NCBI RefSeq assembly: GCF_006345805.1
Contig: NC_043012.1
Location: 7,440,001 to 7,504,000, forward strand
DNA length: 64,000 bases
Direction: 5' to 3'
Source of the DNA: Octopus sinensis
Taxonomy: Eukaryota
Shown here in pieces: positions 1 through 54,540 of this stretch (positions are counted from its first letter, which is position 1; every line of letters starts with the position of its first letter). The position numbers and the translations under genes were made by a program. The notes under the pieces are model-generated. The model was not told the DNA's origin, ran no database searches, and worked only from the letters and a program-made list of their open reading frames with translations.

Positions 1-638
1 CAAATACCGAAGGAAAGGTTTGTTGATCTTTGTGGTTCCATTGCGTCGCCTGACCAGCAATGACTGGACCAAAACAGTCATCAGTTGGAAAATCAGCGTT
101 CACGAAAAAGTTTAATTCTATCTGCAGGTTCTATTGAATTTTGAAAGTGAAATATATTTTAAAATAATTTTTAGCAAACACTGAGTTTATAATCCCACAT
201 TACCACGGTAATGTAAGTGCTTACCTTAATGAGTTTTGGTCAAACAGGTGAATTGAACGAAGAGGTTCGGTAGAATACCCTACGCATTCACCTGACCATT
301 CACCACTAGGTTTTTTTTATGGGGATAATAAAATAAGATAACGTTTACGGCACAAAACCGGAAACAGTTAACGAGCCGAGGGTGGCCATTGAATCGAAAT
401 GCAACAAATACCGAAGGAAAGGTTTGTTGATCTTTGTGGTTCCATTGCGTCGCCTGACCAGCAATGACTGGACCAAAACAGTCATCAGTTGGAAAATCAG
501 TGTTCACGAAAAAGTTTAATTCTATCTGCAGGTTCTATTGAATTTTGAAAGTGAAATATATTTTAAAATAATTTTTCAGCAAACTCAGAGTTTATAATCA
601 TTTAGTATGTGTTTAGTTTTGGTGAGAGACACCCCGTA
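1..638 (+). mobile_element. Tc1/mariner-superfamily transposase 3' remnant with internal 404-bp direct duplication and right TIR
   Basis: Broken + strand reading PHYHGNVSAYLNEFWSNR*IERRGSVEYPTHSPDHSPLGFF..NVYGTKPETVNE..IPKERFVDLCGSIAS matches the WPPRSPDLxPLDFFLWG region. Bases 1-~194 repeat at 405-~599. Ends in gagacaccccg-TA. Confidence 0.8.
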
Positions 639-7370: not shown

Positions 7371-7503
7371 CCAAAACACATTGATTCACTTGAGCACCAT
7401 TTGTTGAACAAGTAGAGAATTGGTTGAGCCGGACAAAGAGTTTGGTTAACTTCAGAATTGCGAATGGCATCGTAACAGGAGAGGCGTAAAGGTTTTTTTA
7501 TTT
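7371..7503 (-). CDS. madd-4: Internal coding exon C of ADAMTSL/MADD-4-like gene (second half of a TSR)
   Basis: Acceptor ttttacttttgttacttcttAG, donor TGG|GTGAGT, 133 nt, phase 1 to 2. Encodes (E)IKKPLRLSCYDAIRNSEVNQTLCPAQPILYLFNKWCSSESMCF(G), a C-x13-C-x12-C-x5-C pattern. In phase with exon B. Confidence 0.75.
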
Positions 7504-10287: not shown

Positions 10288-10573
10288 AGCCATGCCTGGC
10301 TCATAAGGGCCGGTTTCCCGGTTTCTCGGCGTATAGGTTCCCCATCTGGACGGGACGGCGGTCCGTCGCAGGTGAGCTGCAAGATGCAAGAGGAAAGAGT
10401 GAGAGAAAGTTGTGGCGAAAGAGTCAGCAGAAGTTTCGTCATTACCTTCTGCCGGAGCCGCGTGGAGCTTAGGTGTTTCGCTCATAAACACACACATCGC
10501 CCGGTCTAAGATTCGAACCCGCGATCCCTCGACCGCGAGTCCACTGCTCTAACCACTAGGCCATGTGCCTCCA
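10288..10573 (-). mobile_element. tRNA SINE family D
   Basis: Reverse complement of 40547-40848; head gtggaggcacatggcctagtggttagagc..gggttcgaatc. Confidence 0.85.
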
Positions 10574-11019
10574 CTATGTATGTATGTATGTATGTATGTA
10601 TGTATGTAGATATAAGTGTGTACGAGTGCATGTATCATTGTGTTTGAGTATGTCCCCACCAGTTGACAACCAGTTTTGGTTTGTTTACGTCCACGTAACT
10701 TAACAGTTCGGCAAAAGAAATTCATAGAACAAGTACGAAATTTTTTTTTTATTCTTTAAAGCGGTACTCCAGCATGGCCGCGGTTTCAATGATCGAAACA
10801 AGTAAAAGATAAAATATTTAATGGCGAAGCTGCACCAATTTCAGGTTCGCAAACAAGGAACAGAAGTAGTTTCATTATTGAAATGGATTGATTTTTTTGT
10901 CTGTGGATGGAAGATTACATCCAACATTGAATTCCTCTCGGCATCATGGCTATTACAAAGTGCTTTCCAGAAGTTTTCAGATTTATTCAGAAGAGACGTC
11001 TATTAATTTCAAAGAACTA

Positions 11020-25504: not shown

Positions 25505-25710
25505 CTGCTTTGTGGCAGAAGTAGGAAGAAAGAGTGAGAGAAAGTTGCGGTGAAAGAGTACAGCGTGGTTCACCACCCCTCCCTGCCGGAACATCGTGGA
25601 GCTTAGGTGTTTTTGCTCAATAGACACTCACAATGCCCGGTCTGGGAATCGAAACCGCGCTCTTACGACCGCGAGTCCGCTGCCCTAACTACTGGGCCAT
25701 TGCGCTTCCA
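25505..25710 (-). mobile_element. tRNA SINE family D, diverged
   Basis: aaagagtgagagaaagttg..gagcttaggtgtt..gaatcgaaacc..ctaactactgggcc. Confidence 0.7.
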
Positions 25711-25805
25711 CTATCATTGTTGTTGTCGACGTCGTCATTGTCAGCGTCGTCGTTGTCGTTGTTATTGTCATTATTGTTCTTGTCCTTATCGCCATCGTTA
25801 CTTAC

Positions 25806-25964
25806 CTTCCACGTTGTTGTCGCTGCTGAATGTGAAGTCGGTCAGTTTCCAGACGTATGTCCGGTAGTCGGAGCTGTTGTCTGTATCGATGGTCCCTGAA
25901 CCGTGATCGAGACATATCCCCACGTTACACTCCATTGAACTCACCGGTTTCTCTTCGCCAGCAT
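25806..25964 (-). CDS. madd-4: Internal coding exon B of ADAMTSL/MADD-4-like gene
   Basis: Acceptor attattttgtAG, donor GAAG|GTAAGT, 159 nt, phase 1 to 1, only one open frame. Encodes (D)AGEEKPVSSMECNVGICLDHGSGTIDTDNSSDYRTYVWKLTDFTFSSDNNVE, completing the TSR of exon A (KP..C....C) and starting the next one (YxW....FT). Confidence 0.8.
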
Positions 25965-34760: not shown

Positions 34761-35487
34761 CCGAGAGACAATGATCTTAAAACATTCGCAAGGTCCAGAT
34801 GCCTTCTTGAATTCAAAAAGTGAGATTTTTAGTCGCTGCTCTCATGATGGTAAATTTATTTTGGAAACTTGACCTTCCTCGTTTGTGGACTAGTGAACGA
34901 GAAAGAAAACGCACACAAACTGATCATTCTCGAACACAGTTCGACTCGTTCAAAGGAAGGTAGCTGTATTCCTCTCAGAGTGGAATTTTTTACGTTTCAG
35001 AGTTTTTTTGGGTTTTTTTCATTTCGGAGTTTTTTCAATTTGACCAAGAATGTATTCTTACCTCCTTTAGTAAAGAGGTCATGTGCCTCCGGTCAGCAGG
35101 TCTGATGAGTCGCCTATATTGCCAAGTGCAATTGTAGATGTTAAACGAATGGTAACTTTCTGACTGGTCATAACCACGGATATACTACGAGTATATACAA
35201 ACTACTTTGAAAAAAATGTTAGTGTGTGCAATTTTTTTTGGACTTAAGGACAAACGACCGATATATATGAGAGTAGGCGTGCGTGTGTGTGTATGTGTGT
35301 GTGTGTGGGTGTGTGTGTGTGAGTGTGTGTGATTATGTAGCGTGAGAAATCGTAGAGAATCAAAAAAAATACAGAGTGCAATGCTGGTTGAGATAATCAT
35401 TTCACAAGTTTTTGATTTCTTTTTTGCTTAACTCCGCGGTTTCTGATGCTTTTGATACATACGAGCAGCAACAACGACAACACCAAC

Positions 35488-36264: not shown

Positions 36265-36499
36265 CAGAAATGGTACGAAAACTTTTCTAAATGCTCTTCT
36301 GCACTTTACGACTTTTCAAATAAGTTCCTTAACCATTTAACGACCAACAGTACAAGACTGATAACGCGTCCTATTGGAAATTTATAAAAATATTATTTAT
36401 TATTATAATAATTATTATTATTATTGTTATTATTACGTTACTTGTTCTTTTACCCGTTCCAGCCTGCTGATAGTAGCCAGGCTGGGGCCCCAAATATTA

Positions 36500-37420
36500 T
36501 CACTTGCAATACTGGTGTTGTTATTGTACTACGAAGTCAAAATGCTGATATAGGACATGCAGTAACTCATCAGTGGCTGAGGAGTTCAGGGTTGAAAATA
36601 GAGACTGAAGGCTTCATACTTGCAGCACATGATCAAATCTTGCTCACTAGAAATTACCAGGCTAACGTTCTCCGAAACGGTACTGATTCTAAATGCAGAT
36701 TCTGCAACACATTTGACGAAACAACAAACCATCTCGCTTCGGGATGTCCTGTGCTGATACCAAACGAATACACATTTTTACCACGTCAGGGTAGGACAGT
36801 ATTTACATTTGAAAATATGTAACTACTACAAAATTGGAACCCCTACTTACTGGTATGAACATCATCCTGAGCCAGTTGTTGAAGGTAAAAATGTCACCAT
36901 CCTATGGGATTTTCCAGTTAACACTAACAGAACAATCCAGGCTAATCGACCAGACATAATTATTAAAGATAAGGAAGAAAATACATGCAGACTAATAAAT
37001 GTAAGTGTTCCCAGTGATAAAAGTACTTCTGTAAAGGAGTTTGACAAATTTAGTAAATATAAGGACCTAGAAATTGAAATACAAAAGATGTGGAATCTTA
37101 AAGCAAAAATTGTTCCTGTTATTGCAGGTACGATAGGTTTGATTAAAAAAAAAAAGGGATGCCAGAAACATTTAGACAACATCCCAGGAGAACCATGTCT
37201 CAAGGAAATCCAAAAGATTGAGCTGACAATTACTACCAACATCGTTAGAAAATCCCTCTCAATTTAAATGCTAGCGTTGTATTATATTGAGGCTTTTCTC
37301 TACTGCCCTCGTCAATCTTTCAATTATATTTCAACACCTCTTGACTTTCATTTGTCCTAGGGCGCTGGGTATGTCCCGACATGTGATTGCATCAAACAGG
37401 CAGATTAAAAGTAAGCAACA
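36500..37420 (+). mobile_element. R4/Dong-like non-LTR 3' end (CCHC knuckle, RLE, 3' UTR)
   Basis: HQWLRSSGLKIETEGFILAA..CRFCNTFDETTNHLASGC..ILWDFPVNT..RPDIIIKD..KYKDLEIEIQKMW, with one frameshift. Followed by (CTA)/(TAA) arrays. Confidence 0.9.
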
Positions 37421-40546: not shown

Positions 40547-40848
40547 GTCGAGGCACATGGCCTAGTGGTTACAGCAGCGGACTTGCGGTCGAGGGATCGC
40601 GGGTTCGAATCTCAGACCGGGTGATGTGTGCGTTTATGAGCGAAACACTTAAGCTCCACGCGGCTCCGACAGAAGATAATGGCGAACTTCTGCTGACTCT
40701 TTTGCCACAAATTTCTCTCACTCTTTCCGCCTGCATTTTGCAGCTCACCTGCGACGGACCGGCGTCCCGTCCAGGTGGGGAACCTATACGTCAAGGAAAC
40801 CGGGAAACCGGCCCTTATGAGACAGGCATGGCTCGAGAAAGAACAAAC
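40547..40848 (+). mobile_element. tRNA SINE family D, full length
   Basis: A/B boxes tggcctagtgg and gggttcgaatct; body shared with 10288 and 53872. Confidence 0.85.
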
Positions 40849-50003: not shown

Positions 50004-50134
50004 CAATACATTCTTTGTGTGGAACCTCAGTGACTTCGTTCAGAAATTGTAAAAATATTTTGCATGGAACACGCCTCGTTTTGACGCCAGTCCCACATGT
50101 GACACTGCAAGGTGACCAATCATATGGGATGAAT
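50004..50134 (-). CDS. madd-4: Internal coding exon A: thrombospondin type-1 repeat of an ADAMTSL1/3 (MADD-4/punctin/nolo)-like protein
   Basis: Acceptor tttcatgtctttccAG, donor TTG|GTAAGT, 131 nt, phase 2 to 1. Encodes FIPYDWSPCSVTCGTGVKTRRVPCKIFLQFLNEVTEVPHKECI; the FIP..W and CKIFLxF pattern matches my recollection of this ADAMTSL TSR. Confidence 0.9.
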
Positions 50135-53871: not shown

Positions 53872-54150
53872 GGCTCATGGGCTCGGTTTCCTGGTTTCTG
53901 TGGCGTATGTGTTTCTCCCCAACTGGACGGGACGCCAGTCCATCGCAGCGTTACTCAAGAAACAGGAAGAGTGAGAGAAAGTTGGGGCGAAAGAGTACAA
54001 CAGGAGTTGCCACCACTCCCTGTCGGAGGCTCGCGGAGCTTTTAGGTGTTTTCGCTCAGTAAACACACACAACGCTCGGTCTAAGGATCGAAACCGCGAT
54101 CCTCCGACCGTGAGCCCGCGGCCCTAACCACTGGGCTATTGCACCTCCGC
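53872..54150 (-). mobile_element. tRNA SINE family D, diverged
   Basis: Homologous to 10288-10573. Confidence 0.75.
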
Positions 54151-54540
54151 AATCAAAAATACCCGAATTGAAATTTGAGAAACTAATAGAGACCTTCAGA
54201 GAGAGTGGAGAAAGAAAGTAAGAAAAGAGTTAATGCACTGGTTAAGAGTTTGATGTATTTTGATAATCGTTCGTGTATATATGTAGGGTGTATAAGAAGA
54301 TTGTGTGTGTGTGTTGTGTGTGTGTGTGTGTGTGTGGTGTGTGTGTGTGTGCATCAATGGCTATGATGTGTATTTGTATGTCTATATTTCCATGTGTGCG
54401 AGTGCACACATGGAAATATATTTATATATGTATCTGCTACGTATATCTACTTCCGATGTATTTGTGGTTTATGAGCGTGCAGTAGGTGTGAGCATGTATC
54501 GCATGTCCGAGATATGTGCGTGCGTGTGTGTGCGTGCGTG

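What the first reader, a model, noticed from the sequence alone, without database searches (positions are those of the whole stretch)
25806..25850. TSR that has lost both CSxxC cysteines (FTFSSDNNVE instead of FTxCSxxCxG)
Seen: after YVW..FT, the nine residues that normally hold C1 and C2 contain no Cys. The donor position is preserved, and exon C keeps the four later Cys with an altered last spacing (C-x5-C). Established: in thrombospondin-1-type TSRs C1 pairs with C5 and C2 with C6. Inference: a lineage-specific remodelled domain in which C5 and C6 may pair with each other, possibly changing ligand binding in a synapse/matrix organiser. The replacement codons (agc agc gac aac aac) resemble the adjacent intronic (GAC/AAC) low-complexity tract.
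Basis: partly seen in the sequence, partly recalled or inferred. Interest (0 to 1): 0.7.

Follow-up and report, generated by a model that had tools for sequence, protein, structure and literature searches.

The report
Cephalopod ADAMTSL repeat missing two cysteines
One thrombospondin-type repeat of the octopus ADAMTS-like (punctin/MADD-4-type) matrix protein has really lost its first two cysteines and its sugar-attachment site. The change is shared by three cephalopod sequences and by none of 36 other invertebrate orthologues, so it is an old, conserved lineage-specific remodelling and not an error.

Summary
On the minus strand, exon B (25964-25806) ends ...YVWKLTDFTFSSDNNVE|gtaagt. It splices in phase to exon C (7503-7371): EIKKPLRLSC...C...CSSESMC.

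The gene is annotated as ADAMTS-like protein 1 (XP_029646595.1, Octopus sinensis). Its orthologues are named madd-4-like or ADAMTS-like 1/3.

In 30 lophotrochozoan and 6 arthropod orthologues the same module is a six-Cys TSR (..T.CSRSCLGG..C..C..CNDxPC-P). In Octopus, Argonauta hians and a distant cephalopod transcript (P0007) it has four Cys: C1 is S/H, C2 is N, and the last spacing is C-x5-C.

The phase-1 intron sits in the same aligned codon in Lottia, and three flanking introns are also conserved. This is therefore the orthologous repeat, changed by substitution.

The cephalopod domain is only 19% identical to other lophotrochozoans, against 50% among those animals. Within cephalopods it is conserved (85% Octopus/Argonauta).

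Pfam no longer recognises it. AlphaFold keeps the A and B strands and the C3-C4 hairpin but is unsure of the two stretches that the lost disulfides used to hold.

C5-C6 pairing is plausible but untested. Verdict: a real, modestly interesting new variant of a known domain.

The parts
50004..50134 (-). Exon A (131 nt, phase 2 to 1). It encodes (R)FIPYDWSPCSVTCGTGVKTRRVPCKIFLQFLNEVTEVPHKECI, which is C1-C4 of the canonical upstream TSR (TSR5 of the protein).
   Evidence: Splice sites and frame read. Pfam TSP1_ADAMTS E=5.9e-11 on the A+B join. 100% tblastn match to P0002.
25806..25964 (-). Exon B (159 nt, phase 1 to 1). It encodes (D)AGEEKPVSSMECNVGIC (C5-C6 of TSR5), then the fast-evolving cephalopod linker LDHGSGTIDTDNSSDYRT, then YVWKLTDFTFSSDNNVE, the first third of the Cys-less repeat.
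   Evidence: The donor AAG|GTAAGT scores 7/7. The exon is unique in the window.
25825..25827 (-). AGC (Ser) codon at the position of ancestral C1.
   Evidence: Column alignment with 18, then 36, orthologues that all have Cys here.
25813..25815 (-). AAC (Asn) codon at the position of ancestral C2. Together with the residue before it, this replaces the C-X-X-S/T-C O-fucosylation sequon.
   Evidence: Sequon definition from PMC9198472.
25804..25805 (-). GT donor of the phase-1 intron, in the codon three residues after the C2 equivalent. Its position and phase are conserved with Lottia.
   Evidence: Octopus GAA G|gtaagt ... ag|AA ATA; Lottia GGC G|gtaagt ... cag|GT ACT.
7371..7503 (-). Exon C (133 nt, phase 1 to 2). 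It encodes (E)IKKPLRLSCYDAIRNSEVNQTLCPAQPILYLFNKWCSSESMCFG: C3, C4, C5 and a last Cys spaced C-x5-C.
   Evidence: 100% match to P0002 residues 234-278. The Lottia counterpart exon is 130 nt with the same phases.

Best explanation
This is the sixth thrombospondin type-1 repeat of the cephalopod orthologue of ADAMTSL1/3 (MADD-4/punctin), a secreted, non-catalytic matrix and synapse-organising protein.

Shown:
- The module descends, exon for exon, from a canonical six-Cys ADAMTS-type TSR found in all other sampled protostomes.
- On the cephalopod stem it lost C1 and C2. With them went the C-X-X-S/T-C O-fucosylation sequon, the CLGG turn and the Pro after C6.
- It diverged almost beyond sequence recognition and has since been conserved among cephalopods. 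It is present in an assembled mRNA.

Inferred:
- The A strand (YVWKLT..F), the B strand (LRLSC) and the C3-C4 hairpin still form a TSR-like core.
- The two Cys orphaned by the loss of their partners (C5 and a C6 shifted by one residue) bond to each other as a small C-x5-C loop.
- The module is therefore a loosened, non-fucosylated TSR derivative that no longer depends on POFUT2 folding control. It presents a different surface, or a hinge, between TSR5 and TSR7.
For: Gene model and identity:
- Exons A, B and C join in phase.
- The RefSeq protein XP_029646595.1 contains the B-C join at 100% identity.
- Its architecture is a TSR array plus an Ig domain. Full-length relatives add TSR1 and the ADAMTS Cys-rich domain.
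- Orthologues are named madd-4-like or ADAMTS-like 1/3.

Orthology of the module:
- It occupies the same place in the domain order.
- Four intron positions and phases are shared with Lottia, including the one inside the repeat.
- Counterpart exon sizes are 133 nt (Octopus) and 130 nt (Lottia).

Lineage specificity:
- 4 Cys in Octopus, Argonauta and P0007; 6 Cys in 30 lophotrochozoan and 6 arthropod orthologues.

Not an artefact:
- The Argonauta protein has the same state.
- P0007 is an uninterrupted 1067-aa ORF on a 3.5-kb transcript contig.

Constraint after the change:
- The core is 85% identical between Octopus and Argonauta and 55% between Octopus and P0007. The linker in front of it is 50% and 28%.

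Burst of change:
- 19% identity between cephalopods and other lophotrochozoans, against 50% among those lophotrochozoans and 37% between them and arthropods.

Structure (AlphaFold with 36 sequences):
- Strands at residues 82-87 and 105-110, and a confident hairpin at 111-120.
- pLDDT below 50 exactly at 90-103 (the former CSxxC turn) and 126-138 (the stretch leading into C5).
- The best fold matches of the three-module model are tandem TSR crystal structures.

Cys parity:
- Four Cys allow C3-C4 plus C5-C6'.
- P0007's upstream TSR has lost exactly C2 and C6 together, the two partners of one bond.

Reference facts:
- C2-C6 pairing, the sequon and the C6+1 Pro are taken from PMC9198472.
Against: - Sequence-level evidence that the module is still a TSR is weak. 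Pfam finds nothing, even when Cys are written back in.
- A profile of this specific TSR built from non-cephalopods scores the cephalopod domain at only about 10 bits. The best of 1000 shuffles reach 7.6-11.3 bits, and the signal vanishes when the Cys are masked.
- The AlphaFold model was built from an alignment dominated by canonical TSRs, so the retained strands are not independent evidence. Half the domain is low-confidence.
- No tool here measures disulfide connectivity, glycosylation or binding.
- The species behind P0007 could not be determined, so the age of the loss is bracketed only loosely.
- The domain is slightly less conserved than its canonical neighbours (55% against 65-79% versus P0007). 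That would also fit partial relaxation.
Confidence: 0.72

Rival explanations
1. Decaying repeat. After losing two disulfides the module is no longer a folded domain. It survives only as a spacer between TSR5 and TSR7, and the remaining Cys are kept merely to avoid mispairing.
For: Pfam no longer recognises it. It is the most diverged module of the protein. About half of it is low-confidence in the model. It is somewhat less conserved than neighbouring TSRs among cephalopods.
Against: The core is 85% identical between Octopus and Argonauta, like the flanking domains, whereas the true linker beside it is 50%. All four Cys, the C-x5-C spacing, YVWKL, SCYDA and QPILY..KWCS are conserved in the distant P0007. 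A free spacer would not be expected to keep these.
Confidence: 0.2
2. Assembly or annotation artefact. The Cys codons exist but were lost through misassembly, or the open frame up to the donor is intron read-through.
For: The exon sits between two microsatellites and next to a SINE, a context prone to misassembly. The RefSeq model is N-terminally truncated.
Against: The same Cys-less sequence occurs in an independent genome annotation (Argonauta) and in an assembled transcript from another cephalopod. The donor is a perfect consensus at the ancestral intron position.
Confidence: 0.02
3. Microsatellite-driven replacement. The adjacent (GAC/AAC)n tract expanded into, or was copied over, the end of the exon and overwrote the CSxxC codons.
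For: The exon ends AGC AGC GAC AAC AAC GTG. The intron's first ~90 bases are rich in GAC, AAC and AAT triplets.
Against: The distant cephalopod transcript has TTC CAC TCA GAA AAC AAC GTC at the same place. AAC AAC GT therefore predates the Octopus tract. The tract abuts a SINE copy at 25517-25716 and looks like a young, local feature. Exon length and intron phase are ancestral, so there is no sign of an insertion. TGC to AGC is a single point change.
Confidence: 0.03
4. Non-homologous replacement. The ancestral TSR exons were swapped for unrelated sequence, so the module is not a TSR derivative at all.
For: Residue similarity to the ancestral TSR is near the noise level. A beetle repeat protein (P0004) shows a superficially similar KLTEF...SCYD...CPAQ pattern.
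Against: Intron positions and phases on both sides and inside the module are conserved, as are exon lengths and the C3-C4-C5 spacing. The P0004 hit is inflated by four repeats in a partial beetle protein on a 2-kb contig and has no supporting family.
Confidence: 0.03

Closest known systems
The orthologous repeat (TSR6) of non-cephalopod ADAMTSL/madd-4-like proteins, e.g. Lottia gigantea LOTGIDRAFT_157969, Aplysia californica ADAMTS-like 1 and Argopecten irradians madd-4-like
   Same: Same place in the domain order. Same four intron positions and phases. Counterpart exon sizes of 133 and 130 nt. Same C3-C4-C5 spacing and an aromatic Y/F-x-W start.
   Different: Those proteins have six Cys, the CS[RK]SCLGG turn with the C-X-X-S-C sequon, C-x4-C at the end and a Pro after C6. 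The cephalopod module has S/H and N at C1 and C2, VEE/VKD for LGG, C-x5-C and no Pro. Overall identity is 19%.
Group-1 thrombospondin type-1 repeats, as in thrombospondin-1 TSR2/3 (PDB 1LSL, 7YYK) and Pfam TSP1_ADAMTS (PF19030)
   Same: Three-strand layout predicted for strands A and B. A C3-C4 hairpin. The three-module model aligns best to tandem TSR crystal structures.
   Different: The C1-C5 and C2-C6 bonds cannot form. There is no O-fucose sequon, only one Trp, and no Pfam hit.
C. elegans MADD-4/Punctin and vertebrate ADAMTSL1 (punctin-1) and ADAMTSL3
   Same: Secreted ADAMTS-like architecture without a protease domain: TSR1, Cys-rich module, spacer, TSR array and Ig domain. Database names of the orthologues agree. 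The synapse-organiser role is known from C. elegans (e.g. PMC8258370 and PMC6920096, listed).
   Different: No function has been tested in any mollusc. The cephalopod proteins seen here end without the PLAC domain that other molluscan orthologues have.
Upstream TSR5 of the cephalopod transcript P0007
   Same: A second case in the same protein lineage of a TSR that has lost a pair of Cys.
   Different: There the two losses (C2 to Y, C6 to R) are the two partners of one bond, which leaves two intact bonds. In the flagged repeat the two lost Cys belong to two different bonds, which leaves two orphans.

Membership tests
Thrombospondin type-1 repeat (group 1 / ADAMTS type) | Six conserved Cys forming three disulfides (C1-C5, C2-C6, C3-C4) | tested here: not met
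   Only four Cys in all three cephalopod sequences. C1 is S/H and C2 is N. Definition from PMC9198472.
Thrombospondin type-1 repeat (group 1 / ADAMTS type) | CSxxCG turn with the POFUT2 sequon C-X-X-S/T-C | tested here: not met
   The turn reads SSDNNVE in Octopus, SSGNNVE in Argonauta and HSENNVK in P0007. Other orthologues read CSRSCLG.
Thrombospondin type-1 repeat (group 1 / ADAMTS type) | Aromatic (W-x-x-W type) A strand and Arg-bearing B strand ending in C3 | tested here: inconclusive
   YVWKLTDF has one Trp and one Phe at the expected spacing. LRLSC keeps the Arg and C3. Both are predicted as strands, but the ancestral repeat also has a reduced W motif.
Thrombospondin type-1 repeat (group 1 / ADAMTS type) | Recognised by the family's profile models | tested here: not met
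   No Pfam TSP_1 or TSP1_ADAMTS hit up to E = 10, even with Cys restored at C1 and C2. A repeat-specific profile gives about 10 bits, within reach of shuffles.
Thrombospondin type-1 repeat (group 1 / ADAMTS type) | Descent from a TSR (positional orthology, conserved gene structure) | tested here: met
   Collinear with canonical TSR6 in 36 orthologues. Intron phase and position are conserved inside and around the module.
Thrombospondin type-1 repeat (group 1 / ADAMTS type) | Elongated three-stranded TSR fold | tested here: inconclusive
   The alignment-based AlphaFold model keeps strands A and B and the hairpin. It is below pLDDT 50 at residues 90-103 and 126-138. Foldseek matches tandem TSRs at low TM-score. 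The model is biased by canonical homologues.
ADAMTSL1/3 - MADD-4/punctin family (the gene) | N-terminal TSR1, ADAMTS Cys-rich module and spacer, with no protease domain | tested here: met
   Seen in the full-length Argonauta and P0007 proteins and in the O. vulgaris N-terminal model (PF19236 ADAMTS_CR_3). This part lies outside the window.
ADAMTSL1/3 - MADD-4/punctin family (the gene) | C-terminal TSR array interrupted by Ig domain(s) | tested here: met
   P0002 has 6 TSP1_ADAMTS stretches plus Ig_3/I-set at residues 432-509.
ADAMTSL1/3 - MADD-4/punctin family (the gene) | C-terminal PLAC domain | tested here: not met
   PF08686 is found in Aplysia but not in Argonauta or P0007, which end ...CK[HL]GGTNQ. 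An alternative 3' exon cannot be excluded.
ADAMTSL1/3 - MADD-4/punctin family (the gene) | Closest full-length relatives are members of the family | tested here: met
   Top hits across molluscs, a brachiopod, arthropods and vertebrates are all named madd-4-like or ADAMTS-like 1/3.
ADAMTSL1/3 - MADD-4/punctin family (the gene) | Synapse- or matrix-organising function | not testable with these tools
   Known only from C. elegans and vertebrate work (papers listed). There are no cephalopod data.

The most novel reading that the evidence does not exclude
The cephalopod module is a stable new four-Cys fold derived from a TSR. It is held by C3-C4 and a new vicinal C-x5-C bond, and it escapes POFUT2/B3GLCT folding control. 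Together with the equally diverged TSR7, it was reshaped on the cephalopod stem to create a new ligand-binding surface on the punctin/MADD-4 synapse organiser. On this reading it is a molecular change tied to the reorganisation of the cephalopod nervous system.
Probability: 0.1. Interest if true: 0.65.

Novelty: new variant of a known kind. Interest (0 to 1): 0.35.

Why it matters
TSRs are usually described as six-Cys modules, and in ADAMTS/ADAMTSL proteins their folding and secretion depend on O-fucosylation between C1 and C2 (PMC9198472).

This is a natural, long-conserved case in which one repeat of an ADAMTSL protein has dropped both of those Cys, the sugar site and the associated Pro, yet has stayed under constraint. 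It offers a ready-made test of how much of the TSR scaffold is needed, and of whether orphaned Cys re-pair locally.

Its orthologues elsewhere organise synapses and matrix, and the change maps to the cephalopod stem. It is therefore also a small, concrete candidate among the protein-level changes that set cephalopods apart from other molluscs. No function is shown, so the significance is modest at present.

Tried and rejected
- First word-indexed protein search with the 98-aa A+B peptide. It found only one metagenome protein (P0001). Its locus L001 turned out to be an unrelated ADAMTS9/20/GON-1-like gene of an AT-rich eukaryote. It was useful only for building a TSR profile.
- Scan of all open stretches of the window with that TSR profile. 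Only exons A and B scored. An ORF at 8445-8350 with four Cys was rejected because it has no usable splice sites and the wrong phase.
- Pfam on the spliced module, with and without Cys restored: no hit. The generic local TSR profile gave 4.4 bits, about the 97th percentile of shuffles.
- Single-sequence AlphaFold: mean pLDDT 37, uninformative.
- Metagenome contig scan for orthologous exons: nothing.
- Other hits of the exhaustive search (a plant, a beetle and a bacterial repeat protein, P0003-P0005). They were judged chance matches inflated by repeats.
- Identifying the species behind run ERR12374249, by full-text search and by a second homologue search: unsuccessful.
- Literature searches for a described Cys-less TSR in ADAMTS/ADAMTSL proteins, or for cephalopod ADAMTSL: nothing relevant.
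- Microsatellite origin of the replacement codons: rejected on the codon comparison.

Full report
What is in the window

The window is eukaryotic, AT-rich and full of microsatellites and SINE copies. The flagged bases lie on the minus strand. Three exons of one gene are present:
- Exon A, 50134-50004 (131 nt, phase 2 to 1).
- Exon B, 25964-25806 (159 nt, phase 1 to 1).
- Exon C, 7503-7371 (133 nt, phase 1 to 2).

All three have good splice sites, and exon B's donor AAG|GTAAGT is a perfect consensus.

A joined to B gives a complete six-Cys ADAMTS-type TSR, WSPCSVTCGTGVKTRRVPC...HKEC-IDAGEEKPVSSMEC-NVGIC (Pfam TSP1_ADAMTS, E = 5.9e-11). Exon B then continues LDHGSGTIDTDNSSDYRT-YVWKLTDFTFSSDNNVE. 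Exon C supplies EIKKPLRLSCYDAIRNSEVNQTLCPAQPILYLFNKWCSSESMCFG.

Gene identity and reality of the model

An exhaustive HMMER search with the spliced B+C peptide returned a 655-aa protein that is 100% identical over all 98 residues. It is XP_029646595.1, 'ADAMTS-like protein 1 [Octopus sinensis]'.

That protein has six TSP1_ADAMTS stretches and an Ig domain. Its 90%-identity cluster also holds a 1293-aa protein from Argonauta hians, which adds the N-terminal TSR1 and the ADAMTS Cys-rich module.

Searching with the long Argonauta sequence recovered orthologues named madd-4-like or ADAMTS-like 1/3 from bivalves, gastropods, chitons, a brachiopod, arthropods and vertebrates. It also recovered P0007, a 1067-aa protein 53% identical to the query. 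P0007 is one uninterrupted ORF on a 3.5-kb contig assembled from sequencing run ERR12374249, so it is a transcript. Its closest relatives are the octopod proteins (57-63% identity), and every other mollusc is at 29-34%. I infer that it comes from a cephalopod well outside Octopodidae and Argonautidae. I could not name the species.

In a full-length alignment, every non-cephalopod orthologue has a canonical TSR at this place, for example scallop YRAIGETECSKSCLGGVKESILRC...C...CNDFPC-P and chiton YVWRIAGHSTCSHSCLGGVQETLIEC....

The three cephalopod sequences read:
- Octopus: YVWKLTDFTFSSDNNVEEIKKPLRLSC...CSSESMC
- Argonauta: YVWKLTNFTFSSGNNVEETKKPLQLSC...CSSEFMC
- P0007: YVWKLKDFAFHSENNVKDKQILRLAC...CSTEAVC

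The Cys count in the module is 4, 4, 4 in cephalopods and 6 in all 30 lophotrochozoan and all 6 arthropod sequences. The loss is therefore real, is not an assembly error, is not private to this octopus, and is not shared by other molluscs.

Is it the same repeat or something new in its place?

Residue similarity is almost gone. Pfam finds no TSR in the spliced module even with Cys written back. A profile built only from the non-cephalopod copies of this repeat scores the cephalopod module at about 10 bits. That is z = 6.8, but the best of 1000 shuffles reach 7.6-11.3 bits, and the signal disappears when the Cys are masked.

Descent is shown by gene structure instead. In the Lottia locus the exon ends TGT CTG GGC G|gtaagt and resumes cag|GT ACT CAA. 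This is a phase-1 intron in the codon three residues after C2. In Octopus it is AAC GTG GAA G|gtaagt ... ag|AA ATA, with the same phase in the same aligned codon.

Three more introns are shared:
- A phase-2 intron in the Arg codon before the upstream TSR.
- A phase-1 intron in an Asp codon after its C4.
- A phase-2 intron just before the Trp of the next TSR.

The counterpart exons are 133 and 130 nt.

From C5 to the next repeat's Trp is nine residues in both species (CSSESMCFGW against CNDFSCPQRW). The simplest reading is that the last Cys moved one position, onto the site of the ancestral Pro.

What was lost with the Cys

Per PMC9198472, group-1 TSRs carry the POFUT2 sequon C-X-X-S/T-C between C1 and C2, the fucose lies against the C2-C6 bond, and a Pro at C6+1 commonly accompanies the site. 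The non-cephalopod orthologues have all three features (CS[RK]SC, C6 and Pro). The cephalopods have none.

Tempo

The module is 19% identical between cephalopods and other lophotrochozoans. It is 50% identical among those lophotrochozoans and 37% between them and arthropods. The next repeat (TSR7) shows a similar burst (24% against 57%) while keeping six Cys. Other domains retain 60-90% of the usual identity.

Within cephalopods the module's core is conserved: 85% between Octopus and Argonauta and 55% between Octopus and P0007. The new linker in front of it is 50% and 28%. This is a burst followed by constraint, which fits remodelling better than decay. The core is, however, a little less conserved than its canonical neighbours.

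Structure

A single-sequence model was useless. With a 36-sequence alignment the upstream TSR is confident (pLDDT 90-98). In the flagged module the A strand (residues 82-87), the B strand (105-110) and the C3-C4 hairpin (pLDDT up to 87) are kept. Residues 90-103 (the former CSxxC turn) and 126-138 (the stretch into C5) fall below pLDDT 50. The best fold matches of the three-module model are tandem TSR crystal structures, at low TM-scores. Because the alignment is dominated by canonical TSRs, I treat this as consistent with a loosened TSR core but not as proof.

C5-C6 pairing

This is inference. Four Cys allow C3-C4 plus C5-C6'. Both orphaned Cys and the C-x5-C spacing are conserved in all three cephalopods. 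In P0007 the upstream TSR has lost C2 and C6 together, the two partners of one bond. That suggests Cys are shed or re-paired in this lineage in ways that keep parity. No tool here can test connectivity.

The microsatellite idea

The intron does begin with a (GAY/AAY)n tract at 25717-25800, and this tract abuts a SINE copy at 25517-25716. However, P0007 has TTC CAC TCA GAA AAC AAC GTC where Octopus has TTC AGC AGC GAC AAC AAC GTG. AAC AAC GT is therefore older than the Octopus tract. Exon length and phase are ancestral, and TGC to AGC is a single substitution. The resemblance is best treated as coincidence.

Verdict

- The change is old and shared among cephalopods.
- The last Cys is shifted rather than the loop lengthened.
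- The microsatellite link does not hold.

I found no prior description. This is a new variant of a known domain in a known gene family. It is of moderate interest to TSR/ADAMTS specialists and to people cataloguing cephalopod-specific protein changes.

Noticed in passing
window 36309-36374 and 35431-35469, minus strand: Two small exons inside the 24-kb A-B intron match, at 100%, the C-terminus of an Octopus vulgaris short isoform (P0008, 643 aa...HKECIGRVISLVLLVVKWLRNLFEKS...AARMYQKHQKPRS). This isoform would end the protein after C4 of TSR5, in the middle of a repeat. Part of the tail is a low-complexity G/V run, so it may be an annotation artefact or a non-productive transcript.
   Followed up: partly
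window 25517-25716, 53964-54155, 10382-10577, 40557-40727; tract 25717-25800: Four copies of a tRNA-like SINE at 76-80% identity. The copy beside exon B is separated from the donor only by a (GAY/AAY)n trinucleotide tract. An (AAT)n run lies directly upstream of exon B's acceptor.
   Followed up: partly
P0007 / L003 (transcript contig from run ERR12374249), TSR5: The upstream TSR of this cephalopod transcript reads CSATYGTG...ECQAGVRPG. C2 is Tyr and C6 is Arg, so the two partners of one disulfide are missing together. The octopods keep both.
   Followed up: no
Downstream repeat TSR7 (P0002 residues 277-340; its exon lies outside the window): The repeat after the flagged one (WYNLDEYTPCQPTCGDSTQQRLVAC...) is almost as diverged on the cephalopod branch (24% identity to other lophotrochozoans against 57% among them), yet it keeps six Cys and a C-X-X-T-C sequon. 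The remodelling therefore spans two adjacent modules.
   Followed up: partly
P0006 (Argonauta) and P0007, C-termini: Both full-length cephalopod proteins end ...CK[HL]GGTNQ with no PLAC domain. Aplysia has one by Pfam scan, and most other molluscan orthologues list PF08686 among their precomputed domains. An unseen alternative last exon cannot be excluded.
   Followed up: partly
P0002 and P0008 (RefSeq models): The gene seems to be split between models. The O. sinensis model starts MTCGGG inside a TSR and ends in non-homologous sequence. The O. vulgaris model carries only the N-terminal half. The very long introns probably broke the predictions.
   Followed up: no
window 283-534 and 2-130, minus strand: Two near-identical open stretches (NLQIELNFFVN[T/A]DFPTDDCFGPVIAGQATQWNHKDQQTFPSVF...) about 400 bp apart at the start of the window. 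This is a repeat of unknown nature.
   Followed up: no
window 36424-37267, plus strand: Two adjacent ORFs (132 and 152 aa) include a Cys/His motif (CRFCNTFDETTNHLASGCPVL). From memory this looks like the tail of a LINE-type retroelement. It lies next to the alternative exons.
   Followed up: no
L001 (ENA metagenome scaffold, 11.8 kb): An AT-rich eukaryotic contig in a metagenome encodes a long ADAMTS-type TSR array. It is followed by what looks, from memory, like a GON domain, which would make it ADAMTS9/20/GON-1-like. Short introns are placed immediately before each CSxxCG.
   Followed up: partly
L004 (Lottia gigantea KB200701.1), model P0016: The Lottia model has 28 extra residues (EGSDVKDIAKLRCIFDEYDNMTKPNGFF) exactly at the intron after C4 of TSR5. 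No other orthologue has them, so the acceptor is probably mis-called.
   Followed up: no
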